DNA of 63,886 bases, counting the filler, from Bigelowiella natans CCMP2755 (lineage: Eukaryota > Protista > Cercozoa), in assembly GCA_000320545.1 (NCBI GenBank). It is 4 parts of 4 records of this genome, joined end to end, with 100 filler letters (N's around TTAATTAATTAA, not from the genome) between each part and the next. Parts side by side here need not be neighbours in the genome. Positions count along the whole stretch, not along the records: positions 34,005 to 61,953 come from ADNK01003012.1; 3 more parts are not named here. The stretch is one strand, 5' to 3'. The translations under genes were made by a program, and so were the position numbers. Of the stretch, positions 9,516 to 61,953 are shown in pieces. Below the pieces are notes generated by a model, which did not search any database, was not told the origin of the DNA, and saw only the letters and a program-made list of their open reading frames with translations. Positions within the stretch are counted from its first letter, which is position 1; each line of letters opens with the position of its first letter.

Positions 9516-10831
9516 ATGTCGCAGGGCAAAAAAAGCATGTTTTTCGTAAATAGAGAAACAATGAGCATGTACTTCCAATTTCGAAATAATTACGATTCAA
9601 ATAGTTGTCGCATCCTGAAATCCCCCTAAATTCAAGTGTTTTCGAGGGTCCGCTCTGTGCCGACGGCTGCCCGGACAAACCCATCACCTTCGAGCTGAAA
9701 GAAGAGGGAGGGGATGGAAAAGAGACCGAGAACCCAACCCCCTCTAACAAAAAGGAACAAACCAAACAACCGAAAGCGAAAAAAGGACAGAGATGCCCCT
9801 GAGGAGGTCACCTCACAAAAACCGGTGAGCCGGTTCAGACAGGTAGAGAAGATGTTTACTGCTCCAGGCTTTGAACAGTGATATCAAACAGATCTTTGGA
9901 AACAACATTTCCAATTGGAAATTGATATTGCTTTGTTTATATTCCTGTTATCTTGATCAGTGCGATTGCCATCGTCCATCCCATTAGGTTACAAGATCTC
10001 ACAGGTATAAACCTCGCGACCCTCGCTTTGATGAAAACTGTGGGGAAGCGAAGCCGCATCTCTTCCAACAGGTTATTACGCAAATTTTTACAGCTGCAAT
10101 TTTATATTCTTGAAGTGTTAATGATTACATCATCCATTTTGTCAGGCCTACTCATTTATTGACGACATAAAAAATGAGGAGGAGCGTGAAATAACCAAGA
10201 TGATGAAGAAGGTCTATTTGTGTTTCGATATGTTCAGTTGAAATGCCTTAGTGTTATTGCTTTCAGTCTCGTTCCAAGAACACACAATCCAAGCTGCGCC
10301 AAGCGCTTGTAAAATACAAGCAGGAGAGGAAGTATTACGATCTAGAAAGGACAAAAAAATAAGACTACATCGATATAATCGAAAAACTGTGATGGTGTTC
10401 TCCTTTAGAAACATTCTTTTGTTTTTAAAACATTTTGCGAACACACTTCCTACACAAATATGAAACTAGAGTGTGTGTTCCTTTGATAGAATGAAGGAGA
10501 TGCAAGAGAAGCAACGGAAAGTCAAGTCGGAGTGGATAAAGAAGGAACGAGAACTCGTAGCGAAGGGAAAGAAGCCATTCTACTTGAAAAAGACGGAAGT
10601 GAAGCGAATTATGTTGGCCGAAAAATTCTTGACATTGAAAAAAGAAGGGCGTCTTGACAAGGTAGCATAGAGTTGCGATCTCACCGACATTAGAACGTAG
10701 TATGATATAGTGCTCATCGTTGATTCAATATTTCCTAGGCAATGGCGAAGAGAAGAAAAAAGAATGCAGCAAAAGATCATCGCTGGATGCCTCGAAAAGG
10801 CACTACATCAAGTGCACGAAAAAAAGAGTAA
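9516..10831 (+). CDS. RRP36: rRNA processing protein RRP36 (start codon uncertain)
   Basis: Exons encode CPEEVTSQKPVSRFRQV, KPRDPRFDENCGE, AYSFIDDIKNEE, KKERELVAKGKKPFYLKKTEVKRIMLAEKFLTLKKEGRLDK and AMAKRRKKNAAKDHRWMP, the characteristic RRP36 motif series. Confidence 0.9.
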
Positions 10832-34004: not shown

Positions 34005-34016
34005 AAATTATATTTA

Positions 34017-34062
<46 letters not shown>

Positions 34063-34125
34063 TAGCTCGATGCAGTGTTCTTTTATCCTTCATCCTCATT
34101 TTTTCCAAATCCCTCCCCCCCTTAG

Positions 34126-35403
34126 TATTCTTTGCATTCCGAGTGGCTTGCACCTATACTTGCAAGAAGACAGTCCAGGTTTTTGAAATATTGGAGGGCC
34201 CAATTAACGCCACTTCCATCCCCGATGCCACTTCCCATGGATCGACTCCCGCCTCCAAGAAAGACGTATCAATGTGATTCGGTAGCGATTGATTGCTGCA
34301 CATTGTTAGATATTGTTGCACTACTACGTGTTCTTGCAGAACGTGCTAGAGCCCATAATATATATGCATTAAATAACCCTAATTTGAGCCAACACTACCA
34401 CAATGCATAAAAAGGCCGCGTTCCGACTGAGCTCAAACGCTACAGAAGCTTTACGGAAAATGGCAAACAAATTAGGAGTGACACTCACAGCAGTTATGCT
34501 TGCGATCTACGAGGTTAGCATGAAGCACGTTCAACTGATAATTCACGTTAATGAACGTTGGACGCACTAACAGCCTATCTTAATCTCAGGTCTACCTTCA
34601 TCAATATACTTCAAGCACCATATTGTTGCTTGGAATACAACTGCCTGCACGTGTTGAACCAGAGGTCAGCTCAACTCTAAAGAAGCCATTCAAGGCTTGA
34701 TTTCTATTGCAAGATACTACCAACAACTGATATTACCATTTCTTCTTTATCTGATCTACTGCAATATCTCAAGGTCACTCACATAGTCGGCCCGTTTTCC
34801 AATACCGTGCCAATGAGAATGGACTTGTCGGTACTTACAATCATTCTGCTCATACTTTATCATACTTCCCATTTTGTGATGAATCGCTGGAAACAGGACA
34901 GCCAGCTTCTACCTTCGTATGCGATCTTAGAAGATAGATTCTATGGGATCATTCACCCTGTTCGTTATATTATTGCAATTCTTTTTCAGGGAGATCCAGC
35001 TTTTAAAAGCCTTGTACATGAAACACAACGAAACTTGACAAAAGCTGAAGCTCATCAAGAGTAAGTTTGGTTGTGATGATACCCAGGGATTACTTCGGGG
35101 TTAGAAGAGCATAAGTAGCAGATCTACGATTTTTATTCATTGAATACACTTATAATTATATATATATTCAAATACTCATCTTTTAGGTGTCCACTTGCTA
35201 CCCTTCTGAAAGAGACATCAAACAGATTGTCTAAAAATGATAAGAAAGAAGTTGTGCAATCACCAGCTTCTGCATCATCACCAACACCACCACCATCATT
35301 ATCACTATCCTCACCATCAGCCGCTGCAGCTGATGGTGCTATGATGGGGATTCGCATCGCTCCTGATGCAACTCCAGAAAACCTTCATGCGGTAAATTTG
35401 GAC

Positions 35404-35448
<45 letters not shown>

Positions 35449-37431
35449 TAGATAGAGCCTTCATCATTAAATTACTTCTTGGTCCATTACTGAGCAGCAG
35501 CTGCTTATGCCTCCCATTCACGTATGTTACTATCTTCGCGTTATTACAACACATCTCACTATAGGTGTTTGCTTGGGAGGAAACACCACCTTCTCTGACG
35601 TCACTCGGGACTTCTACTTTGAACGCAATGGTACATAAGAAAGAATCACTTCAAGTCAACATCCCCACCTTGTTTTCTCGATATAGTCATAGAACATGTA
35701 GTCGATGACCGGAAATTCAATTCAACAATCATTATAGAGTGAATGAATGAATATCCAACCGTATCATCATCGATGTGGTAGGCCCTAGGTGTGGAAGCTA
35801 AGACAACGTCGATGGGTGGCATGCAGCTAACACCGCTAGAGGTTCCAATGGCTGCTTCTCCAGGTCGTTCATACTTTCCTCATTTTGTCAATAAAGTGAT
35901 GAATGTATAAGAGCCTCGCACCCAATTGATTTTCGAAGAAGGTCGTCCTATTAATCCCCCCCTCCCCTCCTTTTTACTGCGTGATCCTGCAACTATCAGG
36001 TGGAGGGTGTCTAGTAGCGTTGAATGCGGGGATCGTTCACGGCAAAATAGCAGGGTAAAGCCAACTAAAGATTACAGGGCTAGGAAGCTCATCTTTTGTA
36101 GTCATCGTTATTCGTACGATCATCAATACCACTACCTTTTCGCTAACGAGTTGATATTTCCTAATTTTTTTACAAATCAGGAAACTAGTGTTTCAGACGG
36201 ATGTTCTGGAGCGAGACAGTGGAAAGCGTATGGCCAGGTATTATGATTGAGATCAGAAGAGAGCATATCAACGTTGAATTTCTTCTACGGGGTACTAGAT
36301 AAGATATGGTGTGTGTCAATCCTATTAGGCATTTTGAAGAATTGGCATCATCATTAGCTGCTACTGGCGAGGCTGCAACCTCGTCGATGAAAGTAGGAAC
36401 TTAGACAGCCTCTCTCTCCCTCTCTGTGGTCTGATGAGAAGATATAATATTATTGCTGTTTTGATGTTGTAATGATTGAGGTTGTGATGGTGTACACTGC
36501 CTACTTCCTTTGACATAGATATCGGATCTCTCCATGGTTTCGAGGGAAGAGTATGACCTGGTGAGCCGCCATTTCGATGTGTGCGGCGTGTGTGTATGAA
36601 AGAAGATTGGATCAGTGAATAAGAGAACAAATAGGTGTGGAGCGGTATAGTATAACCGCCGTCACACTTTCATCATTTGTCGAGCAATTGTGATTGAAGA
36701 CAATATGATGATTCCATGTGGACATCATATCGACACTACATTGTGTGAATGTTATTTCTCCCAGTTGTTATTCCACGTTATAAAATGAATCATCTTGCTA
36801 TTGCATGCCACAATCAGCTTCTTGGAACTTTCAACGGAAGGAAGAAGGAGCTACCCAAGAAAAAGTTCCTGCATCACCTGGTTGAGGTAGGAAACAATAT
36901 TATTTATTATTACCGAAAATCGTGAAAATTATTGTAGTTGCTACTGGCACTATTATTGCTTGGAAAGCACAATACACATCGCACACTACTACCAACCACC
37001 ACTGCTACTGCTGCAACTAATACAACTACTACCACACACTTTGTACACAACTTTCTTTCAGGATGCAGTCCTACAACACCCCGACACTATCGCTATTGAG
37101 TCTAAACTCGGCAGGTGCATATGTGAGCTCCATTCTGTAGTTCGTATTAGGCGTTCAGTGATTACTTTTCCACAGTTTTTGCACGGCATGACTTGAAGAA
37201 ATCTTCGTCGTCCTATTAATTATTGCACTACGCACTTGTTCATTAATCGAATCAATGAAATACCTAACAATTTGCAGTTTGACGTATAAAGAGTTAAACG
37301 ATCAAGCAAATTGTTTGGGTAATATATATGGTGTTTGTAGCAATACGGGTCTCTCCTCTCTACTTTTCCTTATGATATTAATGCGTAACATATTACTACT
37401 GAGTGCAAAATATTAATGGCTTATATGTATA

Positions 37432-37476
<45 letters not shown>

Positions 37477-37665
37477 TATATGTTGGCAGCTCGTTATCTT
37501 CGATTCTTATCCGTTGGAATTGACCGCCCTGTTCCTGTAATGATGCCGCGATCTCCAAAACTATTTGTGGTGTTGCTGGCAATACTTAAATCTGGAGGCT
37601 GCTGCATGCCCCTGGTACTACTAATACTACTACTACTCTTTCTACAACAACAACAGCTAGTACTA

Positions 37666-37696
<31 letters not shown>

Positions 37697-40540
37697 ATTA
37701 ACCGGTTTTTATGGTTACTTTCGGGTCCTTTGGAACATATTTATGTGTTAAATGGTAGTTGTTTTCCTAATGTTGCAACAACAACTATCTAGGATCCTGA
37801 TTATCCGGAATCAAGGCTGAAATATATGCTTCGAGAGTCTCAGGTGCGTTATCCATTAGTGGTAATGGGTTATAGTACTTGTGACAGTAATGGCATTATC
37901 GGCCCACTTCGTCAGCATCACCATCAACCTCTAAACAAGGTTTTTTTGGCGCGGACCTACTGCATTATTTAGGCAAAATTAATAATAACTACCAGCAAGT
38001 TGAAGAGAGTGATTCCAATTGAAAGTCTCTCCTCCTCCTCCTCCTCCTCCTCCTCCTCAGCAGGGCCTTTAAAGGTCGGTGCTAAGTTATTGGATATGAT
38101 ATCTTAAAATACCCACACTAGTAACGCTGAGCATGCACCTAAAGCCCTTGAATCATGCCATTAGCAGGTTGCTACTGCTCCTGAGATCCTTGAAGTTGAT
38201 GATACAATCTTTTGGGAAACGATTGTAAGTCCCGGGAACAATCGAGATAACCTTGCGGTACTGAAGATATAATCTCTTCCAATTGATGATATTATTGCAT
38301 ATGTAGTCACCTGATTAGTACTGTTTTCCTCCCTTTTGGAATAACAGAGCATGCCTTCGGCTAGTACTTCTGATTTAGCCTATTTGCTTTACACCTCGGG
38401 ATCGACTGGGAAACCAAAAGGTAGTTTGCTTTTGCTTCTTCCAGCAGCAACATATCGAAGCCTCAGAATGATGATGACGATCATGATGACGATGACGACG
38501 ACGATGATGATGATCGCGACTGTTTTTCATTATTGTATAAGATTTGATGGGGTAATGATTTCTATTATGATCCAATACAGGAGTTATGCTCCGTCATTGC
38601 GGTCTGGTGAATTACGTACTGTGGCATATTGAGTTTTATGAGCAAAGTAATGATCAGTCACACTGTGAGATCACCCTCCTCCCCCCATCCCCTTGATTCT
38701 TCCTCTCGCCTTGTTGCAGCAGTTGTTTCTAACTTCTTTTTCCGATGGCGGTAGCATCTGAAGATAGAGCCGGTCATGTGGCAAGCACAGCCTTCGATGC
38801 GTCAATGGCCGAAACATGGTATACTAATCACACACGTATACTCTAATCACTTCATTAAGCGTTTTATCCTTGTTCACTCATCGTTGTCCATCATCATTTA
38901 TAACCCGCTCTGCTGATTCAAACAGGCCAACTCTCTGTTCTGGGGGTACTCTCGTGTTGTTGCCTGATTCCAATATTCGGTTGGATCCAAAGCTGCTCTG
39001 TGAATGGTATGCTGATGAAGGTAATAAGGAGATACTAATAACACTACAGGAGCTTCTAACAGAAGAGAAGAAATTGCAAAAAAATGTTTTCACCCTCGTG
39101 TTATGTGATTCACTTTAATACGTCCCATGTGTCTAATTCCCATCACTAGTGTCCCATGTGTCTAATTCCCATCACTAGTGTAAAGAGTGACTCGATTGTT
39201 GACCTTAACCATACCCACAGGCATTCATATTTCCTTCCTTACAACTCAACTGGCGGAAAGCGTTCTCGCTCTCGGAAGCGCCTCTGCACCTAGCACAGCT
39301 GCTGCTGCTGCTGATACTCCAGCAGTCAAGAAATCGATGGCCGATGCAGGGAAGGCTACGAATAAACTGCTCGTACCAACTCCAACCTCCCGCAGTAATG
39401 TTGATAAGATCTTAGATGCAGCTTCTGGTTCTGCTTATCCTAAACACCTCCGACTACGAATCTTATTCACTGGTGGAGATAAACTGCATGGTGGCCCTCC
39501 AAAGAGCGCCCCATTCGAGCTTGTACGTGTTCTAACACTGCTGCTGCTAATACGTTCTTCAACACCCCCCCCCCCCCCCCCTTTCCTGCAACGCGTCTTG
39601 GTTTCACTTGAACAATAGCCTAAGTTCAGGATTTTATGCTTTTTGTTCGCTTTGAAAGGTGAATATTTATGGACCGACTGAAGCAACAATTAATGTAACC
39701 CTCTGCAAAGTTCCCCATGGCCAGGCGACACCACCTCCGATTGGCAAACCGGTAACAACCAAACAACAGCAGTTGCAGTAATAGCAGTTTTTGTATGATC
39801 GTAAAGCAAGAAGAGGCCAGCATGTTCGTATTAATTGAGAGATGTCGGTGAAATACCTAGTGTAGTTCAGTGGCGGATGGTGCTGGATGGAATATGTTGG
39901 GAATATATAATCCGTCGGCACATTTCTATGAATGATCTAAAATGATTTGGTTTTTTAATGATTATATTTTTAAAAAGTATTATTGTTGTTATTCCTAACA
40001 GGTTCCAAATATGCGAGTGTATATTCTCACTCAAAACTTGAAGCCATGCCCGCTTGGTGTTTATGGAGACTTATATATCGCAGGGGTTTATTCCAACAAA
40101 CTAAATAATAACCACTATCCTCACTACAACGGGATTGAATGTTCTAATTTTCTCCTTTTACTTACATTATACAGGTGCAACTTGCGAGAGGGTATCTCAA
40201 TAGGCCTGATTTGACGAGAGAACGTTTCCTTCCTGATCCATTCTTTGTTTCTACCCGCGAAGAAAAGCAGGGAGTGAAGGAAGGAGGAGGACGAGAAGGC
40301 GGTCCTGAGGAAAGTAGGATGTATAAAACAGGAGATGGTAGTATCTACGACAACTGTACAAAGAACTAACAAATTTATCTTGAAATTTAGAATTATATCT
40401 GCAACTACTACCCATGTATTCCATCGTGATTTTGACGTTTGTTCTGTGTGGTGATGTTCCTTGGCGTAGTTGCACGGTTTCTTCCATCTGGAGAGGTAGA
40501 GTTCCTGGGTCGAAGAGATACACAGGTACACACAAATATC

Positions 40541-40620
<80 letters not shown>

Positions 40621-43600
40621 GAGAATGATATATCCTAAATTCTTCCTCTCTGCTGTGTTGTGCATGCAGGTTAAAATTCGTGGGTACAGAATTGAGCTTG
40701 GAGAAATTGAGACAGTCCTTATAAGCGTTCCTGAGATATCCGCTGCAACGGTCATTGCTAGAGGGGAGGAAGATTCAATGAATAGTGGCAAAATTCTTGT
40801 TGCTTATATTGTCCCAGTTAACTCAATAGGCGTGAAACTTAAGGTACCAATCACAACAGCAATGATTGCAATTTGGTGATCGATCTTTTTATATCATTTT
40901 AAGTGCAGCATTATTGGTATATACCCTGCCATTACTTTACACATTTTCCTGCAATCTTGATCACTATAGCGGTGCTGTTTTGATGAGTGACGATGAAAAA
41001 GGATGGTAACGTCGATGGTGAATGGATGATTGGATATAACTGTTCGTATACTGTTGCAGGGTACCAATGAAGACAAAGGCCAGCAAACCGAAGTAAAGGA
41101 AGATAAAGATTCTATGGATTTTATTCGCCTAAAAGCAAGTGATGCTGTGAAGGCTGCACTACCTGCATATATGGTCCCAACAGCCTATGTGGTGCTTCCG
41201 TCTCTTCCTCTCACTCCCAATGGAAAGATAAAGAGGAATGCTTTGCCTGCCCCATGCGCTCAGGACATGAGGGCTACAGATGGGAAGAAACACTACAAAT
41301 ACACTGCGCCCTCCAGTAAAGCTGAGTGTCTGATTGCTGATGCTGTTGCGGATACTTTGGGGTTATCCAGGACCGGAATATCTATGTCTGATAGCTTTTT
41401 CTCCCTCGGTGGCCATTCTCTCAGTGTGTCAAGACTTTTGAGCAGAATAAGGATATTAGGCATCATGCATCTTTCAATAACAGATGTGTATAAATCTCCG
41501 ACACTAAAAGACCTTGCTTCTCTTCTTACCGACGAGCAAGCTACTAATCGATTAGCATTATTACGTGGCGGTGGTGATGTTGATAGCATCGAAAAGACTG
41601 GACAACAGGCACTTGTGAATAATACAGAGAACACTGAGAAACTAGTTTCAGATCGAGACCGCCAAAACAATAATACCCTTACACCTAATATAGATTCAGG
41701 AGAAAGGAAAGATAGACCGCTATTATTGCTTGAAGATGAAGGTCGGGAAAGCGATTTGAAAGAGGAAAATGCGCCTTATTCTTCCTTATCCCAAGCACCG
41801 AATTTCACTATGACCTTGGAACAAATAGAAAAAATGTATTCATGTAAAGATCAAGAAGGGATGCATTTGTCGTTTAATCAAGAATCAATGTACACTCAGC
41901 ATAGACGAAACTCTAATGCTAGTAGAGCATATAATACAAGATTTGCTGCAGAGATGAAAAGAGAGGAAGTTGACTTCAAACGGCTGCGAAAGTGTCTATG
42001 GATGCTTCATAAGCACCATACTTCACTTCGCACACGCTTTTCACCTGGAAAAGATGGAGATTCCCCTCGTCAGCATATAGTTCCTTTATCTTCGTTTGAA
42101 ATGGATTATGTTGAGATCGACGACTTCAAGCAGCAATCTCAAAATCTACTCAAAGAAGTGCGAAATCTGGCCAGCAAGAGATTTGACCTGGAGAAGGGAA
42201 ATGTCTCGAGGATAATAATAGCTCACAAGCAAGATGGCAAGACAAGTATATTCACATGGGCAATACACCATATTTCCATCGATCTATGGAGTTTTGCAGA
42301 ATTACTCTCAAGCTTGGGAAAAGCATACGCTTCAACAGGAAACCCATCAATGACAGTACAGGGTCCTCCTCCTCTCCAGTATATTCAAGTAGTTCCATCA
42401 TTAAGAAATTGGGAATCCGAGCGGAAGGAAAAGGTGCATGGTTTCTGGCAACAGACCTTAGCACCGCCATTGCCGGTATTGGATATGCCATTGGATAGAC
42501 CACGACCGCCAAAGCAAAGCTATAGAGGAGCTTCCATGGGGCTGGACATACCTCCTGAGCTTGCAACAAGAATCAGGGCATTAGCCATGGGAGAAGGCGT
42601 CTCCCTCAATACACTGATGCTTACTGCGTATTTCATTTTGCTTCAAAAATATACGCACCAAGACGACCTCATCGTCGGGGTTCCAACAGCCGGAAGAGAC
42701 CAGCTTGAACATGAACGATGTTGTGGCTACTTCGTCAATCCTGTACCCTTGAGGCTCTCCCTGATTGGAGATCCACGATTCGTAGATACTCTGAAAAGGG
42801 CACATTTAGCCCTCACGCAGGCCATGGAGCATTCCACTATTCCCATCGCTGAGCTGGTGAAATCCGTTGTGAAAGTTGGTAAAAGAGATACAAGTAGGCC
42901 CATGCTGTTCCAGACGCTCTTTGTCACTCAAAAGCCTCACAAACTAGGAAATGAAGGGTTGGCATTCTTCTTCACGGATACGCCTGGAGTATCGCTGCAA
43001 CTAGAAGCACACGATTCGGCAGCAACAAAATCTCCACCCTCTGGTGGCTCTCATAAGTTGGAGATGAAGTCTTTCGTGCTTGGACAAGAATTCGCAGAAT
43101 ATGATATTGCCGTCATGATTGCTGAATCTCCAGCAAGGCTAGCAGCTAGTTTCCAATACAACACTGATATATTCAATAAAGATACAATCAACCGTTTTTC
43201 GAGGCACTACCTTGCTATATTATCATCAATTGTTAGAAATCCAAGCGCCTATCTCTCCAAGGTGTCTGCAGTGCCTCCCTGTGAGTACCGTGATATTATG
43301 CGGTGGAATAGTGTCAAATTACCTTTTCAAACAAGAAAGTGCTTGCACGAGATTGTAGAAGAAACGGTACAAAGGCATCCTGATAGCGTTGCTGTGGAGG
43401 GTGTGGTTGGTGGAGGGAAGAAAGAGCGACAACAATTTACCTATCGGAAGCTGAATGAAAAGGCGAATCAATTGGCACATTACCTGCGCTTCAAAGGAGT
43501 TGAGAGTAATAGTTTGGTGCTAATCTTACTTAAGAGATGTCCGACGTATATCGTCTCCCTGCTTGCAGTTCTAAAAGCTGGAGGAGCTTGTGTACCAATC

Positions 43601-46600
43601 GACCCAAAGTATCCTCCGGAAAGAATCAAACACATAGTTGAACTTGCTGGTTCAAACTGCCTTGTTTTGACAGAGAAGAAACTATTTGAGGAGAAGTTTC
43701 CTAATTTCTTTTCGGAAAAGAAGAATGCAGCCACTTCTACTTCATCGTATTTGCAGCAGCAACAACAACAACAACAAAAGCAACAACGACCGTATCCTCT
43801 TCCCCCTCTTTTCCTAGATTCAGATAGCAATCTGTCAAAGCTTTTAGCGCGAGGATGCACTGAAAATCTACCTAGAGCACCAAATCTTTCGCCAGAAAGT
43901 ACTGCATTTGTCATTTTTACTTCCGGAAGTACCGGTAAACCTAAGGGTGTCATGTTGCGACATCGAGGATTGGCGGCTTACATCGCTTGGCATATTGAAA
44001 AATTTGAAATGTCTCAGAGTGACAGGGTTTCGCACCTTGCATCCGTAGCATTTGATGCCTCTATGGCGGAGACCTGGCCAACACTGGCTATTGGTGGTAC
44101 TTTGGTTCAAATACCAGCAGGAGAACGAAGGGTTGTTGCAGATTCAAAGTGCTTCGATCGATGGATCACAGAAAACAAAATCACAGTATCCTTTCTACCT
44201 ACTGTTGTTCTGGAAGCATTTCTTGATATGAAGCACGATAACTGCCATCATGCTTTGAGGCTAGTTTTTACAGGCGGAGATAAGCTACACCGAGGACCAC
44301 AGAAGGGGGCAAAGTATGCTGTTTTGAACAACTATGGGCCTTGCGAAAACACAATTGGATGTACATGCATAGAGGTGCCATTCGACTACAAGCCTCCGCC
44401 CTTTATCATCGGCTCACCAGCTCCAAATACACAATTGTTTGTACTGGATGATCATAGGCAGATGTGTCCAATCGGCGTCAGTGGAGAGATTTACCTTGGT
44501 GGCCAGCAACTAGCCAAAGGGTATCTCGCTCGAAAAGATCTGACAAACCAACGATTCGTTGCATCTCCATTTAATCCTTCTGAACGCATTTACAAAACAG
44601 GGGATATGGGGCGATATTTACCTGGTGGCCAAGTAGAGTTTCTGGGTAGACGTGATACACAAGTCAAAATAAGAGGAAATAGAATCGAAATGGGGGAGGT
44701 TGAGGCAGCGTTTCTATCCTTCAAAGGGGTTAGAGAAGTATGTGTTGTGTGTCGTGAAGATGATGATGGAGCTGGTGGGCGGCCTCGTAAGTCATTGGTA
44801 GCATATGTTGTACCACAAAGCGGATTCTTAACAGAACAGAATAGCTATTCCAAACGCAAAGAAGGCGGTGAAAAAGAGAAAACAAACACGGGAAAAGAAA
44901 TGCAAGCATCACGCACCAGTAGTTCTTCTTCGAATGGTAGAAAGCTTGGTCAAAATGATCATCGGTTGGATTTGAGATCGCTGCGAGGGCATTTGAGGGC
45001 TACGTTACCAGAATTTATGGTTCCTTCTGCTATCGTTGTCCTCGAGCGATTTCCTCTCACTCCCAATGCTAAAATAGACCGTAGAGGCTTACCTCGCCCA
45101 GAAAGCGATGATGTGGCAGCAGGAGCTGACCGAATAGCTCCTCGCACGCCAGCAGAAACTACCGTGATCTCTGTTGCAGAGCAGGTTCTGGGTCTCCCCA
45201 AGAATAGTGTGGGAATGAATGATAACTTCTTCGACTTAGGAGGCCATTCACTGTTGGCTGCAAAGTTGGTATCTCATTTGGAGGTACAGCTTACAATCAC
45301 AGTGCCATTCGCTGCCATCTTTGACGAGCCTAATTTCGGGGCTTTGACACGACGCATTACTCTAGCTCGCTCCAATCCAAACGCAGCCCAACGAATACAA
45401 GACATTAAAGTCATCAAAAGAGAGGAATCAAACACAGTGGAAATAGGGACTCCGAGAAGTCCATTTGGAGATTATGACTCAAAATTTGCCGCACCACGAC
45501 TATCAGGAGATAGAAAACAGATGAGACGTTCGAATTCCTCCTTTACTATGCTCACCCAATCATCAGATGGCAACCGATATGGACCCAAGTCGTACAAAGA
45601 TTCTCCGATGTCTGAATTCTTGCAACAACAGCAACACATATATGATGAGAACAACATGGATGCTGCCGCTGTTCCGAGCAACCCTCTCACTCCAATGCGT
45701 TTAGTGTCGGAGGACACATCTGCAGCGGTTGGCATCATGGATGACGACATCACACAACAGACTGAAGGAACTGAACGCGCAGGTACTGATATCGTAATAA
45801 ACAGTGGTAATAGTCCCAGAACAGCGCGTCTTGCTCCACCAGCCTCTGCTCTGGCTACTTCTCCCTTCTCGTACTCGCATTTAACTTTAGGAACTACGCC
45901 TTTAAGGACGAGAAGGGGAGGGTTTGCAATAACTCCTTCCGCAGCTGCCTCTAATGAAACACCTCTTCATCGTGGGGGTGATGGTAATAGTAGTGTTGCT
46001 AGCAGGGAAGTTGCAGGAGCAGTCTCACCATCACTACAATTTGAGCCTGGGGAAGGGTATATGACTTACAATCAGCAGAGTCTTTGGTTCATGCACTCGC
46101 TTGATGTTGCAGCTTCAAACGCGTATAAATGTTCATTTGCTATGGAGGTTGCAGGAGATCTCAATGGTGGTAAGGCATGCACGTGGGAAGACAAGTACAC
46201 AACAATCCGTGCTGCTTTTCAGCGCTTGGTTGATTCACACTCTAGTCTTCGTACAAGTTTTTGCGAGAGAAGAGGACAACCTGTCCAGAAAATCAGATCT
46301 CCTGGCTCTCCTGTAGATATTAAAGTAGTAGAAGAAGAAGGTAAGGGGGGGGCTCGATCAAGATGGCAGCACAATGACAACTCAAAGAATTTGCTTCTGC
46401 AAGCAATTCAATCCGAGTTGGAAGAGCCATTTGATTTAGAGACGGGTCCTATAGCGCGAATGCGTATTTTCCCATTATCACCATCGTCATCGTCATCGCC
46501 ATCATCGCCTTGGGCAGTTATAGTTTTTGTTGCTCACCACATCGTTGTCGATGGTTGGTCGGTCAAACAAATACTTCTTCCCAAGTTCAAGCAATATCTC

Positions 46601-49600
46601 CAAAATGAAATTAGGACGCCATCTTCCTCCTTGCTAGAAATAACACAAGATTTTGAATCTGATGATGATGCCGCTGGCGACGCTATTGATTATGCACTAT
46701 GGCAGCAAGGCTTAGTTCGGGGAGGGGAGGGAAGAAGGTTGTGGAATTACTGGAAAAGGCAGTTAGCTGGTCCATTACCTACCTTGGAAATACCAACCGA
46801 TTTTCCTAGACCTCCTCGGCAATCATTTGAAGGAGGGTTGTATTCAATAGATATCCCCAACACATTAGCTGCTAAGCTCATGGCAACAAGTAAGAAGGAA
46901 AGGGCGACTCTTTTCATGATTTTTGCAGCTGCATACTTTACACTATTGCATCGGTACACATCGCAGGTGGATATTATAGTCGGAACCCCAATGGCATGCA
47001 GAGGAAGAAGTGACGTAGAAAGTTTAGTAGCCCATCTTGTCAATCCAGTAGCACTAAGGATCAATATTTCTGGTGATCCCTCATTGAAAGAATTGATCAA
47101 ACGAATTCGGACTGCTACTGTAGGAGCTTTCACGCATCAAGAACTTCCGTTCCCTCTTATTGCAGAAAGAATCCAAAAATATCGGGATTCATCACGAAAT
47201 CCTGTATTCCAAGCACTATTCGCTCTGAATCAGTTCTCTAGCTCCAAACACGAGAATATAAATAGTGCTCAAGGCGATGAAAAGTCCAGTAGTAGTCCGG
47301 AGATTTCTCACACTTGTCCCAGATTTGAATCTGTAGATCTTGGAGAAGTGGGTTCCCCATTTGATCTTCAGTTCATCGTAGATGTCAACGAACCTACCAA
47401 TAGAAGTAGAGGTGAATCGGCTAAGATAACAGCCAAACTTCAATATGCGTCGAGGTTGTTCCTTCCACAAACAATCGAATTTATGGGAAGACATCTGATG
47501 TCCATTTTGAATGCAATTGTCACTGATTCAACAACGCCTGTATCAAAGGTCTTGCTTGTTTCTAGAGACGAAAAGAAAATGCTGCATCAATGGGGTGGGT
47601 ATGATGATTCCACATCCCTGTCACAGAAGAACGGGAGAAACGATACTGGCAGGAGAACAGGGGGAGGAGTTCTTGCTTCTATACTTGGTGCAGCCACCAG
47701 ATTTCCTTCCTCGCTAGCGCTCTGTTCAAAAACCTCTCACTTAACGTACCGCGGTCTCTTGGAATTGTCTGCTCATATTGCAACAGAGATATATGGAAAG
47801 CTAAGATCAAGACTAAGAGAAGATTTGAAGAATGATAGTACCGGTAGTTGTTGTGTGGTTGGAGTCATGATGCAAAGAAGTACAGTGTGGATTGCATCCA
47901 TTATTGCAGTGTGGTTGTTGGGCGCTGCGTATGTTCCAATAGACCCTGATTACCCACAAGCACGCATTCAACATATGCTTAAGGATTCATCCGCAGTAGC
48001 TCTTCTGATTGATAAAGATGTTGGTGACGATGATGACAATGATAATAAAGATAATGGTGCTAATGCAACGACAGCAAAAGTGAAGGGAATTAGTTCAATT
48101 GTTATTCCAATCTCCGGCAAGCTCAGAACAGATGATGGAAAGGTTCCCAATGGCTACTATCATCGAGAGTGGAAAACACCAAAGTATGATCCTACTAGCC
48201 TGGCGTATATCATATATACTTCTGGATCAACAGGGCGGCCAAAGGGGGTCATGGTGCCTCATGGTGCCTTAGCATCTGTGACATCATCTATGAAGAGGGA
48301 ATATAAAATCCAGCATACGCATAGAACTACACAGCTATTTGGGCCTGGATTCGACCCTGTAGGCTTGGAGCTCTGGCCATTTCTCACATCTGGGGCAAGT
48401 ATTCACGTTGTGCCTGAATTACTGCGAAAAGATCCTCCTTCGCTTGTCAAATGGATAAAACGGCAGCAAATAACTCACTGCCAAACTCCAACGCCTATTG
48501 CGCACGCAATGATGAAAGAAAATTGGGAAAATACAGCCCTTCAGGTGATGTCTGCTGGTGGGGAGAAGTTAATGGTTGATTTTATGGGAGAAACAACGGA
48601 ATTTGCTCTGAAATCAGCAAATGAGAACGTGTGTCGTCGGCCGTTTAGGTTTGATAATCACTACGGTCCTAGTGAGTGTACGATAATCGCAACCCTTTTC
48701 AAAGTGCCTGTGGGATTCAAAGGGGGGCCTCCAATAGGAAGGCCTATTTTGGGATGCTTCTGTCTGGTTCTGGAGACAACATCGATAAGGCACGGAGATG
48801 ATGGGGGTGATGCAACAAACAAACGAACAGCACCACAATATTGTCCTTTATTAGCTCCAATAGGTGTATTCGGAGAACTTTGTTTGGCAGGAGATCATCT
48901 AGCCAAAGGGTATCTAAATTTACCCGAAAAGACCTCAAAGACGTTCGTGAATCATCCAAATTATGGCAGAATATACCGAACGGGTGATAGGGCTAGATGG
49001 AATCGTGATGGATACTTAGAATTCGGTGGAAGATTAGACAGACAGGTCAAAGTGCGTGGCTTCAGGATAGAATTGGGAGAAATTGAAACTGCATTGCTCA
49101 GCGCAAGTAGCGCTGTCAAGCAGGTAGCGGTATGTGTAAGGAAGAAATCTGGAGATTACAGTGGGGAAGCTTTGGTGGCGTATGTAGTTCTAGGAGATTC
49201 TAAATCTAGCAGAGCAAGTCAAAAACCAGAACACCTGAAGAATCACGGGGTGCTGGTTCAAAAGCTTGAATTAAGTACAGAAGATGAGGCCACGCTGAGA
49301 GCTTCGGCAAAAGAGGCACTTCCTGAATACATGGTTCCCTCTGTATTTATCAGGCTGTCTAGATTTCCCCTCACACCGAATGGAAAACTAGACAGAAAGG
49401 CTCTACCCATGCCAAATTGGTCTGAAATTGCAGCGAGAAATGCAACAAATATTACTGCATTCGTAGAACCAGAAGGAGCGTATGAAATCAAGGCTGCTCA
49501 AGTGTGGAAGTCTGTCCTCGCTGTAGATGTAATTGGAGCAAATGACAGCTTCTTTGATTTAGGAGGGAATTCTCTCACAGCGTCATCGGTGATTGTCGGG

Positions 49601-51277
49601 CTTAGAGATGCTTTTGGAATTACCCTTACGATATCAGATCTGTTTGAAAATCCGAGTGTGCGTGGGGTTGTAAGGAGGATAAAGATTATCAAGGGTGAGA
49701 AGGACGATGCTGTACACCCTTCAAATATAGGTGTAGATGAAAAGAAAGCTAGCCAAATTAGAAGCAATTCGACAGAGTTATCGTCTACCCAAAAGGCCAT
49801 GTTGGAAGACATTGAGAAGATATTGGGTGAGATTAAATTGCAAGAAAAATATCCAGATAGTATTAGTATCCATTCATTAGAGTTGAAGAATGTAAACATG
49901 CCCTTTACCGCAAAAATACAACCAAAACCAGTCGAAGAGTCTCAAACAGTAGTCTTTCTAACCGGGGCTACAGGTTTCTTAGGAACCTTTATCCTTGCAG
50001 AGCTATTGAAATTAACAAATGCCACGATATATTGCGTAGTGAGGTGTAAATCTAAATCCTCAGCCAGCACTAGTGGTGGTAGTGGTGCTCTTGCAAATGA
50101 TGCCTTTGAGAGATTTCCTGAGGCAGATGATAGAATCCAAGAATCTTTGGAAAAATATGGATTATTTTATTTAACTGCGAATAGAGATCGTGTTTTTGGT
50201 ATCCCTGGAGACCTAAAGGAGCCTAGGCTTGGATTGAATAAAAAAATATTTAAAACGCTGTCAAACCGTGTGGATTGGGTAATACACTGCGGGGCATGGG
50301 TAAACTCTGTATTACCTTACAGTCAACTTAGAACTGCCAACGTGTTCGGTACAAAGGAGGTACTAAGACTGGCTACCTCGGGCCGAAAATTGGCACTGGT
50401 GAGCTACATATCAACCCTTTCCGTATTTGATGCTGGAAGAGGGAAAAAGATCAAGGAGACTGATGAACTGCCTGCTGTGACAAGGACACATGGAGGTTAT
50501 CCCCAAACTAAATGGGTGTCGGAGCGGCTCATGTTGGCATGCAACGAGAAGGGAATTCCATGTGAAATCTACAGGCCAGGAAGAATAACTGGAAATTCGC
50601 GTACAGGCCATGCAGCGACAGAGGACTTTCAATGCCGTTTAATCAAAGGATGCATTCAACTTGGGGCCTATCCTGACCTTGATTGGATCATGGATATGAC
50701 GCCTGTAGACTATGTATCTCGTTCGATTGTTACTGCTGGAGTGAGAGGACTGATGCAGCTGGAGGCTGATGGTTCCTCTTCACAACAGACAAGTGGATGG
50801 TCAAAACCATGTTCTATTTATCATTTGTGCAACCCAAACCCAATTCAGCTCTCTCAGCTTTTCCAGTGGCTGTACAGGTTCGGATTCCCTGTGAAAGAAA
50901 CGACATATACCCAATGGCGTGAAATGATTATTCAGGCGGCAAAGAATAGTAGCGCTCCAAAAAAGAAAAGGTTGACAATTAAGGTGAACGAAGAGCAAAA
51001 GCGAACCACAAGCTCGTCTGACACCAACATTGTAAATCCACTTGTTGCGGTGCTTCCACTTCTCTTGCCGGAGAAACAGAAAATGGGCGATAGGAAGACA
51101 ATGCCACTTTTTGATACTTCGAACACGGAGGCAAGACTCACGAAAATCTCAGAAGAACTGATGTGCCCAGCCATCACTGATGATTTGTTGGATACATACT
51201 TCGGATATTTTGTTTCGTCGAGATTCCTCCCAGCTCCAAACTACGATCAATTTCAGTTTGAAATGGACAAATATTAG
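34126..51277 (+). CDS. Multimodular non-ribosomal peptide synthetase, 5'-partial: C1(half)-A1-T1-C2-A2-T2-C3-A3-T3-R (terminal thioester reductase)
   Basis: About 30 small exons (34126 to about 40843) encode the C-terminal half of C1 ([34 protein letters not shown]) and A1 ([55 protein letters not shown]). They splice (KLK|GTNE) into one exon at 41060-51277 with T1 GGHSL (Ser 41417), C2 HHISIDL (42266), A2, T2 GGHSL (45248), C3 HHIVVDG (46535), A3, T3 GGNSL (49571) and R (TGATGFLG at 49961; YPQTK at 50498). Confidence 0.95.
39122..39179. repeat. Perfect 29-bp tandem duplication in an NRPS intron
   Basis: gtcccatgtgtctaattcccatcactagt occurs twice. Confidence 0.95.
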
Positions 51278-54688: not shown

Positions 54689-56290
54689 CTATATCAATTT
54701 CGGTCTCAAACTCATCTCATCCTGACTTTGACGGAGAAATCTCGCGATTGGTATGCTTCTGCTCCTGCGATCATCTGAATCTGATACAGACAACAAGTTT
54801 ACATAAAGCAAAATTGATTTTTTTATCTCAATACCATCATTGAACGATGTTTGAGCTGCCTTCTCTATCCTCTTAATAAAATTTACAGAATCGCTTAGCA
54901 TTATCTTGTTCATCAACCAGACTGGTAACTGATAGACAAAACTTTGATCAAAACGACGAAGTACGGTGTTGAGAGCATTCGAGATTATATTGATTTCGTC
55001 TACCGATCCTCCAACATCAACATGCTGGACAAAGGTAAATTCACACTCTCCACTTTGCTTGAGGGGTGTGACGCGATTTGCCCCAAGGATCATGTTGGCA
55101 CGGACGCACCCTAAAACAGGCAAGTAGTACTCCTCAGTCATCGCTCCTTTGCATCATAACAGACTTAATTTTGTTGTTACCCACCTTTCAAACCGCTAGG
55201 ACATTTTGGATGATCTGTAGATTTATTTAAAATCAAAATATCCCCTTTCGCTGTCCTTAAAAGCTGGACGAATGTGACAAAATCGCGAGGACTAAAGAAG
55301 GGAACCCCGTACGTTTTTGACCTACATGAAAGCATGTGTTAGATGGACTTTTTTGAGGACGAGAGGAATACATTTTGCACCAGGATATCTTCGTGTAGCC
55401 ATTGATCTTTTCGATATCCTCACCGTCAGAATACATAGGATTAAACTCCCGGATTTTATCAACTGAGGAGCTTTGAAATAACTTGAGGACATTTTCGGCA
55501 TCTGCTTTTATTCTCGCGTGACCTCGGATCTGCTTCAATTTACTGCCCTTAACAATGCGAGAATAGATAGTTACACCATCTTCTTCTGTTTCTTTCTTCC
55601 ACCCTCTATCATCACTATATATCGCTTCTAAAGCCTTGGGAATCAGGTCATCCGGAGGAGAAGTAGATTCATGGAGGTGGCTCGATGTCTCTTTTTGTTC
55701 TCTGATAGGGAGTTTAGCTATTTTCAAAAAATCTCTGATTTTAAGAGAAATTCTTTTGGCTGTGTCTGAAACTTTGTCTGCCGCATTTGGCAGAACCTAG
55801 GTAAAAGAAATATGAAAACGTTGTGGTATGCATTTCCCTCTGTGATCTTGCAAACTCTCGCTAATTCATACAAATCATGCTTCTACATGCCTAATACTGC
55901 TACCATCACCACTAATACTGTTCAAAAGCACATCCATAATGCAAATATTTGCATTTTTTTTACGTGAAATGATGTTGAAGGTGTCGTAGAGGCAAGTCCA
56001 TGCTCCTTATGGATGATGCTGCAATCTTCCTCAGGCTTCATAGATTGCCTTGAAAAGGCTGCACCACATAAGCAGACTGTAACTAAGGCCTGTTGTAAAG
56101 ACTCCGTTATATTTGAATTCGGGTTGAATAACATGATCGGTTCATTTTCTTCTGTACCGTTAGTGAAAGAGCTGCAATACGTCTCCGTGTAACTCGATTT
56201 GCATCTTCTTTTTTCGAACCAGTTTCAGAACTGGCATAGCCCGCGCATTTAATGCCACAGAATAATCCATGCGGGCCTCCCATCTATTCA
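54689..56290 (-). CDS. START-domain lipid-binding protein (5' exons uncertain)
   Basis: Exons: GWKKETEEDGVTIYSRIVKGSKLKQIRGHARIKADAENVLKLF..ISW|SKTYGVPFFSPRDFVTF..|GCVRANMILGANRVTP..EFTFVQHVDVGGS|LPVWLMNKI. The W..G, PRDFV, VRA, D.GG and P.W motifs of START domains are present. Confidence 0.8.
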
Positions 56291-56705: not shown

Positions 56706-57823
56706 ATGGACGGCACTTCGAAATCACAACTGAAGCAGAAGATAAGCAAGAACAAAGGCATCACCGTTTCCGATACTACAACTAGTAGCAAAACCTCGAT
56801 AGCAAAGCAGGTGGACGCTAAGGATGATGTTGCTCTTCCGGATACTGCAGGTTTCAATGATTGCTCTAATTGTTGGAAGAATATCAATCTGAAGTTTCTC
56901 TAATCAAAGGTGGCCTAGCCTTTAGTCATGCTCCAGAGCATGGTATATCTCTCTTTCTAGCACGACGAACAAAAACAATTCACTTCATTCGGCATGCAGA
57001 GGGAACTCACAACGCAGTGAATAGGTCATACTTGTAATTTTATAGTAGACGTTATGAAAATATTAATTTTTTTGCACATAATAGAGCGTATGGTGATGAC
57101 ACTCCTTGTGTTTCCTCAACACCGGGAAGTTGGAAACAAATCGATGCTCGTCTCACACACGCAGGTATCAAGCAATGCCTCGAGGCAAGAAGTGGAGTTT
57201 TACTTTCTGGGGTGAAACCTGAACTTGTCGTCGTGTCTCCACTCACACGAACCCTTCAAACGGCACATATTATGTTCCATTCCAAAGGGATACCATTTAT
57301 TGTTCATGATATCTGCCGCGAGCGCTGGGGGAAGTATACTTGTGACAAACGTCGTACCGCAAAGGAAATAAAGGATGATATGACTGGAATATTTGCAAAA
57401 ACACATGAATCTATTGACTTTGACTCCTTCGGTTTCGAAGAGGAAGAGGACAAAAAATGGACTGAGAAACGAGAGTCGGATGAAAGTTGTTGTGCACGCG
57501 GAGTCGATCTTCTCAAGTGGCTCGCAACTCGCCCAGAAAATGACATTGCAGTTGTAACACACAGTTCGTTCCTGCGACATCTATTCCGTGCCTTTGGGTT
57601 TTCCTTGGATAAAAAAGATATGAAGAAGTTACACCGTAAGCATGGAAATGCAGAAATAAGATCTGTAACCCTGGCTTTGCATCGTGGGTTTTATCCTGAA
57701 GGTACATGGACTGAAGATGATGTTTTCATTCCGGCTCATCCATCGTTTCGGAAAGGAAAGTGGGCATATGCAGCCGCTTCCATTCAAAAAATGCATGCCA
57801 AAATTCGTCCTCCAAAGCCTTGA
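56706..57823 (+). CDS. Histidine phosphatase superfamily (phosphoglycerate-mutase-like) protein
   Basis: Spliced RRTKTIHFIRHAEGTHNAVN|..DARLTHAGIKQC..ELVVVSPLTRTLQTA..CRERWGKYTCDKRR..RESDESCCARG..IAVVTHSSFL. The RHxE/G, SPLxRxxQTA and second catalytic His motifs are present. Confidence 0.92.
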
Positions 57824-61805: not shown

Positions 61806-61883
<78 letters not shown>

Positions 61884-61915
61884 CGCGCGCGCGCGCACAC
61901 ACACACACACACACA
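61806..61915. repeat. Compound alternating microsatellite (TA)n-(CG)n-(CA)n
   Basis: Directly visible, just before the gap. Confidence 0.93.
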
Positions 61916-61953
61916 GAGAGAGATATAGATATATATATATATATATATTGATA

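What the first reader, a model, noticed from the sequence alone, without database searches (positions are those of the whole stretch)
34126..41060. Abrupt intron polarity inside one gene: about 30 introns in module 1, none in the next 10.2 kb
C1-A1 is cut into about 30 small exons over about 6.9 kb, then T1 through R is a single exon (41060-51277). This fits 3'-biased intron loss by recombination with a truncated reverse transcript. It also fits progressive intron gain from the 5' end of an acquired intron-less gene, or fusion of an old module to a younger block. Because A1 and A2 are paralogous, intron positions can be compared directly within the gene.
Basis: partly seen in the sequence, partly recalled or inferred. 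Interest (0 to 1): 0.75.

Follow-up and report, generated by a model that had tools for sequence, protein, structure and literature searches.

The report
Intron-packed start, intron-free rest, one gene
A giant, bacterial-type peptide-synthetase gene of the alga Bigelowiella natans has about 30 introns in its first 3 kb of coding sequence and none in the last 10.2 kb, and its two closest relatives have almost no introns, so it is a clear natural case for studying how introns are gained and lost.

Summary
The piece is Bigelowiella natans nuclear DNA. The gene is the known JGI model Bigna1/82242, a 4453-aa NRPS with three C-A-T modules and a terminal reductase.

Exact mapping puts 30 GT-AG introns (30-321 nt) between 34179 and 41059, followed by one 10,215-nt exon (41060-51274). 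Spliced transcript contigs from two studies reproduce at least 21 of these junctions and link the small exons to the giant exon. They also correct the JGI model: one false 30-nt exon and one missed 102-nt exon. The count stays at about 29-30.

At the genome's mean density, 64 introns are expected in the giant exon (P of none about 1e-28). A sharp step fits better than a gradient.

The fusion reading is disfavoured. The last intron lies inside the A1 C-terminal subdomain. GC3 is equal in both parts. Each A domain pairs with its positional counterpart in the orthologue.

The two closest relatives, both on eukaryote-like metagenome contigs, carry one intron and none. The introns are therefore most likely gains in the B. 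natans lineage.

Whether the 3' 10 kb was later cleared by a spliced cDNA (my preference, about 0.45) or never colonised (about 0.33) cannot be settled here.

The parts
34005..34060 (.). (TA)n microsatellite at the 5' edge of the piece. The gene continues upstream: P0001 residues 1-165 are not held.
   Evidence: Sequence read. P0001 residues 1-165 have no match in the piece.
34124..41059 (+). Intron-dense 5' segment encoding the C-terminal half of C1 and most of A1. The JGI model has 30 exons and 30 GT-AG introns here, one intron per 88 nt of CDS. Intron phases 0/1/2 are 18/7/5. Intron GC is 0.37 against 0.47 for exons.
   Evidence: Exons are supported by tblastn with the uninterrupted orthologue ORF.
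34126..34290 (+). Homology-supported first exon in the piece, in the frame of 34132. JGI exon 1 (34124-34178) uses another frame. One intron follows; a candidate is 34282-34414.
   Evidence: (49% identity over 55 aa to the L001 ORF), alignment, splice candidates.
34831..34989 (+). JGI intron 4, exon 5 (34897-34959) and the 30-nt intron 5. This stretch is in frame and free of stops, and exon 5 is absent from the orthologue, so it may be one 159-nt intron. No reads were laid here.
35392..35564 (+). One intron in the transcript. JGI exon 8 (35452-35481, 30 nt) is skipped. The intron contains (TA)n.
   Evidence: the X6 loose end before 35564 is the sequence at 35361-35390. Those 10 residues are absent from the orthologue.
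35864..37277 (+). JGI introns 10-16 and the exons between them. Every junction is reproduced by spliced contigs.
   Evidence: table 5 (X2 and X6 joints with GT..AG ends), compared.
37973..38074 (+). A 102-nt exon missed by JGI, lying inside JGI intron 19. It is flanked by introns 37844-37972 and 38075-38164.
   Evidence: joint 37843/37973 and the loose end before 38166; frame and GT donor at 38075; the orthologue has matching residues that the JGI model lacks.
38258..40174 (+). JGI introns 20-27 and the exons between them. This includes the 302-nt exon 25 (39221-39522) with a lineage-specific low-complexity insertion that is present in the transcript.
   Evidence: table 5 joints for introns 20-23 and 25-27; table 8 pieces of X2 record 8 for intron 24.
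40844..41059 (+). Last intron (216 nt, phase 0). It splits A1 inside its C-terminal subdomain, between the A8 motif in exons 29/30 and the A10 motif in exon 31.
   Evidence: In one search the X2 piece ends at 40841 and the depth of bin 40901-41100 fits about 43 covered bases. X1 contigs of a 2-4% divergent strain keep this intron.
41060..51274 (+). Single 10,215-nt exon. Domain positions: end of A1 to 41227; T1 41333-41527; C2 41855-43297; A2 core 43358-44527; T2 serine motif 45239-45253; C3 His motif 46535-46552; A3 core 47807-48916; A3 C-terminal subdomain 49079-49387; T3 49499-49681; R 49958-50728. The stop codon is at 51275-51277.
   Evidence: It is collinear with P0002 with only small insertions. 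The length of X2 contig record 8 (4020 nt) places its end in the poly-Gln repeat at 43754-43786, as expected if 41060-43776 is unspliced (inference).

Best explanation
**Shown.** This is one transcribed nuclear gene of Bigelowiella natans. It encodes a bacterial-type NRPS with three C-A-T modules and a terminal thioester reductase. Its product is presumably a reductively released tripeptide aldehyde or alcohol, of unknown identity. The first 3.1 kb or so of CDS carries 29-30 spliceosomal introns. The remaining 10.2 kb is one exon.

**Inferred, strongly.** The gene family came from bacteria and is patchily spread among eukaryotes. Its two closest relatives have one intron and none. The module-1 introns were therefore gained in the B. 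natans lineage after acquisition, by the ordinary non-Introner gain process seen in chlorarachniophytes.

**Inferred, moderately; this is my committed mechanism.** Introns first colonised the whole gene at the lineage's usual high density. A spliced, 5'-truncated cDNA of at least 10.2 kb then recombined with the locus, by gene conversion or double crossover. This erased every intron 3' of codon 1049 in one event (reverse-transcriptase-mediated intron loss). The 5' crossover fell at an arbitrary point inside the A1 C-terminal subdomain.
For: **One gene, spliced as modelled.**. The word share of 0.26-0.28 matches the exonic fraction of 31-mers, so X2 and X6 are RNA.

**Domain set and motifs.**

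**Bacterial affinity and patchy eukaryotic spread.**
- In some searches, the hits that carry a source name (a minority of those listed) are almost all bacterial and mostly cyanobacterial, at 28-39% identity.
- The closest hit other than the window's own protein is P0002, at 46% identity.
- PMC4661987 reports NRPSs in only 7 of 32 algae, and the same domain arrangement in Aureococcus.

**Intron-poor orthologues.**
- L001 encodes module 1 in one frame. It has one 85-nt GTAAGT..CAG intron, and its frame change is an N10 scaffold gap.
- L002 holds a 14.3-kb uninterrupted ORF beside a CRAL_TRIO gene.

**Whole-gene orthology.**

**Both parts have been resident equally long.** GC3 is equal, and lineage-specific low-complexity insertions occur in both parts.

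**Intron gain is active in chlorarachniophytes.** Organelle-derived genes there carry introns, and gains occur at AG|G sites with (AT)n repeats (PMC12730881). Here 9 of 30 junctions are AG|G and 3 introns hold (TA)n.

**A step, not a gradient.** Intron positions are uniform within the 5' part (KS p = 0.63). A step model beats an exponential decay by 6.9 log-likelihood units with the same number of parameters.

**The mechanism is established elsewhere.** RTMIL is the standard explanation for retention of 5' introns (Mourier & Jeffares 2003 and Roy & Gilbert 2005, as cited in PMC7738191).

**Lineage context.** PMC12730881 leaves open extensive intron loss in the B. natans lineage.
Against: - No intron-bearing orthologue or paralogue shows that modules 2-3 ever had introns. 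The scenario therefore needs roughly 60-115 extra gains plus a loss, against 30 gains with a positional limit.
- A conversion tract of at least 10.2 kb from a cDNA is long.
- Expression looks low: 15 raw RNA reads among 624 million letters of X10. RTMIL is expected to favour abundant transcripts.
- The only intron of the L001 orthologue is also near the 5' end.
- Intron density in module 1 (1 per 88 nt) is above the genome mean (1 per 159 nt). That could point to a local gain process instead.
Confidence: 0.45

Rival explanations
1. Gain restricted to the 5' end. The acquired gene had no introns, or only one, and introns have only ever been inserted in the promoter-proximal part (about 7 kb of DNA, about 3 kb of CDS). 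The 3' 10 kb was never colonised. Some feature tied to distance from the transcription start limits where new introns arise or become fixed. Candidates are chromatin state, co-transcriptional spliceosome loading, or selection for 5' introns that boost expression.
For: - This is the most parsimonious count of events, given orthologues with zero and one intron.
- The one L001 intron is also 5'-proximal.
- Module-1 density exceeds the genome mean, as a local hotspot would produce.
- Typical B. natans genes are 2.8 kb long, so such a limit would be invisible except in giant genes.
Against: - No known gain mechanism gives a sharp cut-off.
- Density does not decline within the 5' part (KS p = 0.63), and a gradient model fits worse than a step.
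- Both parts are equally ameliorated, so lack of time cannot explain the empty part.
- No Introner family or boundary repeats point to a special local process.
Confidence: 0.33
2. Segment replacement or fusion. The intron-free block from T1 to R is younger DNA joined or converted onto an older, intron-rich 5' part. It could come from a second horizontal transfer or from an intronless paralogue.
For: The abruptness of the step. The gene family is mobile among distant eukaryotes.
Against: - The boundary is inside the A1 C-terminal subdomain.
- GC3 and third-position base use are indistinguishable between the parts.
- Identity to L001 is 54% in module 1 and 50% in the rest.
- A1, A2 and A3 each pair with the positional counterpart in L001 at SH-aLRT 100.
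- C1 shares the same unusual motif in all three orthologues.
Confidence: 0.07
3. Artefact. Either the small exons belong to another transcript, the long ORF hides many in-frame introns, or the assembly is chimeric with a contaminant.
For: - The JGI model is ab initio and has errors.
- Two JGI introns are 3n and free of stops, so hidden introns are possible in principle.
- Reads were laid only on 35101-41100.
Against: - A 4020-nt spliced contig bridges exons 20-30 into exon 31 at equal depth.
- Only 2 of 30 introns could hide in frame, so a normal density would break the ORF many times.
- B. natans-specific insertions in exon 31 are few (9 of 12-46 aa) and not intron-like in GC.
- Host-like GC3 and microsatellites occur on both sides.
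Confidence: 0.03

Closest known systems
Retention of 5' introns by reverse-transcriptase-mediated intron loss (RTMIL; Fink 1987, Mourier & Jeffares 2003, Roy & Gilbert 2005, as summarised in PMC7738191; also PMC2395259 and PMC3629103 by title)
   Same: A contiguous run of intron positions is empty up to the 3' end while the 5' introns remain. The border is sharp and unrelated to protein domains.
   Different: - The pattern is known mainly as a genome-wide trend in intron-poor species, or as the loss of a few adjacent introns.
- Here it would be one event of at least 10 kb in an intron-rich genome.
- The gene's orthologues never show the lost introns, so the ancestral presence of those introns is unproven.
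Lineage-specific intron gain in chlorarachniophytes (Amorphochlora amoebiformis genome paper, PMC12730881)
   Same: Canonical GT-AG introns. No shared sequence or terminal repeats. (AT)n repeats occur in some introns. A fraction lie at AG|G sites. Exons are about 100 nt long. Originally intronless, organelle-derived genes acquire introns.
   Different: That work compares ribosomal-protein genes between species and reports no positional polarity. Here the gains sit in a horizontally acquired giant gene and stop abruptly.
Introner / transposon-generated introns (Huff et al. 2016, Gozashti et al. 2022, as cited in PMC12730881)
   Same: Many introns gained in one lineage at high local density.
   Different: Apart from (TA)n, the only matches between introns are 14-19-nt hits at E about 0.005-0.008. 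There is no excess of boundary direct repeats (mean 2.4 nt against 2.39 in controls).
The B. natans NRPS as already catalogued (Shelest et al. 2015, PMC4661987; JGI Bigna1 protein 82242)
   Same: It is the same gene: 490 kDa, 10 domains, three C domains. Aureococcus is noted as having the same arrangement.
   Different: That paper does not discuss exon structure. The intron polarity, the model errors and the intron-poor orthologues are not described there. None of the papers returned by my searches describes them either.

Membership tests
Non-ribosomal peptide synthetase, (C-A-T)x3-R | Ordered Condensation, AMP-binding, PP-binding domains and a terminal NAD-binding reductase | tested here: met
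   Pfam hits: C 476 bits, A 427 bits, NAD_binding_4 203 bits, and 3 PP-binding stretches.
Non-ribosomal peptide synthetase, (C-A-T)x3-R | A-domain core motifs A3, A7, A8 and A10, and the carrier-domain GG(H/N)SL serine, in every module | tested here: met
   each motif was found three times, at collinear positions. The module-1 motifs lie in exons 21, 28, 29/30 and 31.
Non-ribosomal peptide synthetase, (C-A-T)x3-R | Catalytic HHxxxDG motif in every C domain | tested here: not met
   C2 (HHISID) and C3 (HHIVVD) have the motif. C1 has AADAAVCD in its place. L001 (SADALVCD) and L002 (VADQTIAD) have similar replacements. C1 is therefore a conserved non-canonical domain. In B. natans this part lies upstream of the piece.
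Reverse-transcriptase-mediated intron loss | Concerted absence of adjacent introns extending to the 3' end, with a sharp border | tested here: met
Reverse-transcriptase-mediated intron loss | Introns demonstrably present at those positions in an ancestor or relative | tested here: inconclusive
   The only two close relatives found have zero and one intron overall. No chlorarachniophyte orthologue was found.
Reverse-transcriptase-mediated intron loss | Precise excision at former junctions; a reverse transcriptase source and an abundant transcript | not testable with these tools
   Former junctions are unknown. Expression in the one raw RNA run is low.
Introner-derived introns | Introns form a sequence family with terminal repeats or target-site duplications | tested here: not met
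   All-against-all blastn found only (TA)n matches plus 14-19-nt hits at E about 0.005-0.008. Boundary repeats equal the control.
Horizontally acquired gene resident in the nucleus (not contamination) | Bacterial-type closest homologues and a patchy eukaryotic distribution, together with host features (spliced introns, host composition) | tested here: met
   distribution; splicing; GC3 about 0.38-0.39 in both parts. Donor and direction were not determined.

The most novel reading that the evidence does not exclude
Intron colonisation in B. natans is confined to the promoter-proximal few kilobases of a transcription unit. This limit is invisible in normal 2.8-kb genes and is exposed only by this 20-kb, horizontally acquired gene. 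The gene would then act as a ruler showing that new spliceosomal introns arise or are fixed only near the 5' end. That would tie the mechanism of intron gain to transcription initiation, early elongation or 5' chromatin.
Probability: 0.25. Interest if true: 0.8.

Novelty: new member of a known kind. Interest (0 to 1): 0.5.

Why it matters
How spliceosomal introns are gained and lost is still argued from genome-wide statistics. Clean single-locus cases with a known intron-free starting state are rare.

This gene has four useful properties:
- It has a bacterial-type origin and two near-intronless orthologues.
- Its first part has an intron density above the host mean.
- The remaining 10.2 kb is a completely empty stretch.
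- The border between the two lies inside a protein domain.

It therefore sets two mechanisms against each other: a single erasure by a long cDNA, and position-limited gain. A handful of extra genomic sequences could decide between them.

It also corrects the public gene model of the largest known microalgal NRPS. In addition, it shows that the first condensation domain of this NRPS is a conserved variant lacking the catalytic histidines.

Tried and rejected
- **Introner or transposon origin.** All-against-all blastn of the 30 introns gave only (TA)n matches plus a few 14-19-nt hits at E about 0.005-0.008. Boundary direct repeats equal the control. Rejected.
- **Fusion or younger block.** GC1-3, RSCU and third-base composition do not differ between the parts. 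The A-domain tree and collinear BLAST show module-by-module orthology. The border lies within a domain. Disfavoured.
- **Frame change in L001 at 9887-9902 as a second intron.** It is an N10 scaffold gap. Rejected.
- **Hidden in-frame introns in exon 31.** Nine lineage-specific insertions were examined. A few have in-frame GT..AG pairs, but their GC is 0.41-0.47, which is not intron-like. At most a few could hide; this is not excluded.
- **Searches that gave nothing.**
  - The first whole-length protein search timed out.
  - P0001 is not on record in the look-up of encoding contigs, so the scaffold upstream of the piece could not be fetched.
  - The R-domain query for short relatives found nothing above 38% identity.
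  - Curtis et al. 2012 is not held.
  - The literature searches returned no paper that, by its title or abstract or, for the three papers opened, by term look-up, describes this polarity.
- **Not done.**
  - I did not identify the organisms behind L001 and L002.
  - The large representative search was left unused, because the word searches answered the question of close relatives.
  - No exon model that I joined myself was sent to any search tool. The spliced protein used is the database's own P0001, given by id, and my own exon checks were made by reference or in local scripts only.

Full report
**What the piece is.** The piece 34005-61953 has 40-47% GC and is bounded by (TA)n microsatellites. 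It holds a 3415-aa ORF at 41030-51277. Pfam reads this ORF as PP-binding, Condensation, AMP-binding, PP-binding, Condensation, AMP-binding, PP-binding and NAD_binding_4.

A word search with its last 616 residues returned a 100%-identical protein, P0001. The source names it jgi/Bigna1/82242 and it is 4453 aa long. The DNA is therefore nuclear DNA of the chlorarachniophyte Bigelowiella natans. The gene is the one catalogued as the largest microalgal NRPS: 490 kDa, 10 domains, with the same arrangement in Aureococcus (PMC4661987).

**Checking the observation.**
- I mapped P0001 onto the window exactly, codon by codon, allowing only GT/GC..AG introns.
- Residues 166-4453 lie in the piece as 31 exons. 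Residues 1-165 lie beyond the 5' edge.
- Thirty GT..AG introns of 30-321 nt (mean 143, GC 0.37) lie between 34179 and 41059.
- They separate exons with a median of 69 nt (mean 89, GC 0.47).
- The last exon is 41060-51274, which is 10,215 nt.

**Independent support from an orthologue.** The orthologous module of a metagenome contig (L001) is one uninterrupted frame. In tblastn it hits the window in collinear blocks on most of the JGI exons, with stop-filled sequence between them.

**Transcript evidence.** Runs X1-X5 hold 0.26-0.28 of the 31-mers of 35101-41100. This matches the fraction of 31-mers that lie wholly inside exons, about 0.25 by my arithmetic, so these runs hold spliced RNA. I then laid X2 and X6, from two studies, on that stretch.
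- They give GT..AG joints identical to JGI introns 10-16, 20-23 and 25-27.
- Pieces and loose ends also confirm introns 6, 24, 28 and 29.
- Intron 30 is supported because the X2 piece ends at 40841 and the depth of bin 40901-41100 equals about 43 covered bases.
- The shown evidence does not cover JGI introns 1-5, 9, 17 and 18.
- X2 record 8 (4020 nt) runs spliced from the exon at 38166 through exon 30 and about 2.7 kb past 41100, so the small exons and the giant exon are one transcript.
- Its computed end, 43776, falls in the poly-Gln repeat at 43754-43786. A de Bruijn contig would break there. This fits an unspliced 41060-43776, though that is an inference.
- Stranded raw reads (X10) are few (15) and fit a + strand RNA. 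Expression is low.
- X1 holds contigs that keep the introns and differ by 2-4%. It is another strain, either DNA or unspliced RNA.

**Corrections to the public model.**
- JGI exon 8 (35452-35481) is skipped. The X6 contig joins 35391 to 35565, and those 10 residues are absent from the orthologue.
- JGI intron 19 hides a 102-nt exon, 37973-38074. Its residues match the orthologue where the JGI protein has a gap.
- JGI exon 1 is in the wrong frame. The homologous exon is 34126-34290, in the frame of 34132.
- JGI exon 5 and its 30-nt intron are doubtful.
- The count remains 29-30 introns.

**More than chance.**
- B. natans averages 7.8 introns per gene, 159-nt exons and 184-nt introns (Curtis et al. 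2012, as tabulated in PMC12730881).
- The giant exon should then hold 64 introns, or 116 at the local density. P(0) is 1.3e-28.
- Only 2 of the 30 upstream introns are both 3n and free of stops, so a normal density could not hide in an open frame.
- Against the orthologue, exon 31 has nine small lineage-specific insertions of 12-46 aa with GC 0.33-0.47. A few have in-frame GT..AG pairs.
- At most a handful of hidden introns are possible.

**Relatives.**
- Only two close relatives were found. No chlorarachniophyte orthologue appeared among proteins of 339-5976 aa.
- L001 is an ENA marine metagenome scaffold with 60% GC. It sits next to a MINDY-3/4 gene. It is collinear with P0001 over the whole length.
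- Identity to L001 is 54% of aligned columns in module 1 and 50% in the rest.
- L001 has one 85-nt GTAAGT..CAG intron at the position of P0001 residue 103/104. Its frame change at 9889-9898 is an N10 gap.
- L002 is a JGI metagenome contig with 45.6% GC, next to a CRAL_TRIO gene. It holds a collinear 4770-aa NRPS as one 14.3-kb ORF.
- Among the other hits, those that carry a source name are almost all bacterial and mostly cyanobacterial, at 28-39% identity.

**A-domain tree.** In a quick IQ-TREE of 43 A domains, each B. natans A domain is sister to the positionally equivalent L001 domain, with SH-aLRT 100 in all three cases. L002 A2 and A3 join at 95 and 94. The whole eukaryotic set forms one clade at 100. 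The careful tree search did not finish, so these values come from the quick search.

**C1 motif.** All three orthologues share an odd C1 in which HHxxxDG is replaced by (A/S/V)ADxxxxD.

**Interpretation: fusion.** Fusion of an old module with a younger block is disfavoured for these reasons:
- The three-module architecture predates the split from the relatives.
- GC3 is 0.394 against 0.377, chi-square p = 0.44.
- The step lies at residue 1048/1049, inside AMP-binding_C of A1 (residues 1002-1104). It falls between motif A8 (exons 29/30) and motif A10 (exon 31), not at a module border.

**Interpretation: origin of the introns.** The family is bacterial in type and its relatives have zero and one intron. 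The module-1 introns are therefore best read as gains in the B. natans lineage.
- They are not Introners. Apart from (TA)n, matches between introns are only 14-19 nt at E about 0.005-0.008.
- Boundary repeats are not above the control.
- They resemble the lineage-specific introns described in Amorphochlora: GT-AG ends, some at AG|G sites (9 of 30 here), and some with (AT)n (3 of 30 here). Organelle-derived genes there have also acquired introns (PMC12730881).

**Interpretation: the remaining question.** Was the 3' 10.2 kb never colonised, or was it colonised and then cleared?
- Within the 5' part, intron positions are uniform (KS p = 0.63).
- A step model beats an exponential gradient by 6.9 log-likelihood units.
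- Both parts look equally long-resident.
- A step at an arbitrary codon is what recombination with a 5'-truncated spliced cDNA produces. This is RTMIL, as summarised in PMC7738191.
- PMC12730881 leaves open that B. natans has lost many introns. The 89-nt mean exon here is close to the 101-nt mean of the intron-richer Amorphochlora.
- I therefore prefer whole-gene colonisation followed by one cDNA-mediated erasure, at about 0.45.
- Against it: no relative shows the supposedly lost introns, the conversion tract is very long, the transcript is rare, and parsimony favours gain limited to the promoter-proximal region (about 0.33).
- That second reading would be the more novel. In a genome whose genes average 2.8 kb, only a giant gene could reveal such a limit.

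**Comparison with what is known.** The gene and its protein are known. Retention of 5' introns and RTMIL are known kinds. The papers returned by my searches do not describe this locus's polarity, its intron-poor orthologues or the model errors. I file it as a new and unusually clean member of a known kind.

**Limits.**
- Reads could be laid only once, on 6 kb. Regions 34.1-35.1 kb and 43.8-51.3 kb lack direct transcript evidence.
- The scaffold upstream of the piece could not be fetched.
- The organisms of L001 and L002 are unidentified.
- No exon model that I joined myself was sent to a search tool. The database's own spliced protein, P0001, was used by id.

Noticed in passing
P0001 residues about 150-165 (upstream of the piece); L001 about 7180-7210; P0006 (L002) about residue 400: The first condensation domain lacks the catalytic HHxxxDG motif in all three orthologues. 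The replacements are AADAAVCD, SADALVCD and VADQTIAD, whereas C2 and C3 keep HHxxxD. C1 is a conserved non-canonical domain, possibly non-catalytic.
   Followed up: partly
window 34005-34125 and P0001 residues 165/166: Relative to both orthologues, the JGI protein lacks about 35 residues between 'CD' and the exon at 34126. The piece starts in a (TA)n run, so an exon probably lies in or beyond an assembly gap upstream.
   Followed up: partly
window 41053-41166: A contig of run X1, from the divergent strain, joins 41053 to sequence matching 41166-41192 with one mismatch. It skips 112 nt across the intron 30 / exon 31 border. This could be a strain deletion, an alternative splice or an assembly artefact.
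   Followed up: partly
window 39298-39625: Several loose ends and a pile of 10 raw reads ending at 39625 sit on (GCT)n/(CCT)n-like low-complexity sequence in exon 25 and intron 25. They probably come from cross-mapping of similar repeats elsewhere.
   Followed up: no
window 57212-57823 (+) and 54689-55141 (-): Downstream ORF fragments match His_Phos_1 (E = 5e-12) and, weakly, START (E = 0.002, below Pfam's cut-off). These neighbouring genes are also split into ORF-sized exons. There is a GC-rich stretch (0.49-0.53) at 53.0-54.5 kb.
   Followed up: no
window 61880-61953: A compound microsatellite, (CG)n(CA)n(GA)n(TA)n, lies at the 3' edge of the piece. Both contig ends stop in simple repeats.
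   Followed up: no
L001 6925-7009; L002 8001-22313: Two eukaryote-like metagenome contigs carry orthologous three-module NRPS genes with one intron and no introns respectively. Together with Aureococcus (PMC4661987), this suggests the family has moved between distant eukaryotes.
   Followed up: partly
window 35187-35391, 39221-39522, 43736-43807, 44816-44953: Lineage-specific low-complexity insertions (Ser/Pro/Ala-rich, poly-Gln, Lys/Glu-rich) occur in both the intron-rich part and the giant exon. The two in exons 7 and 25 are present in the transcript contigs.
   Followed up: partly
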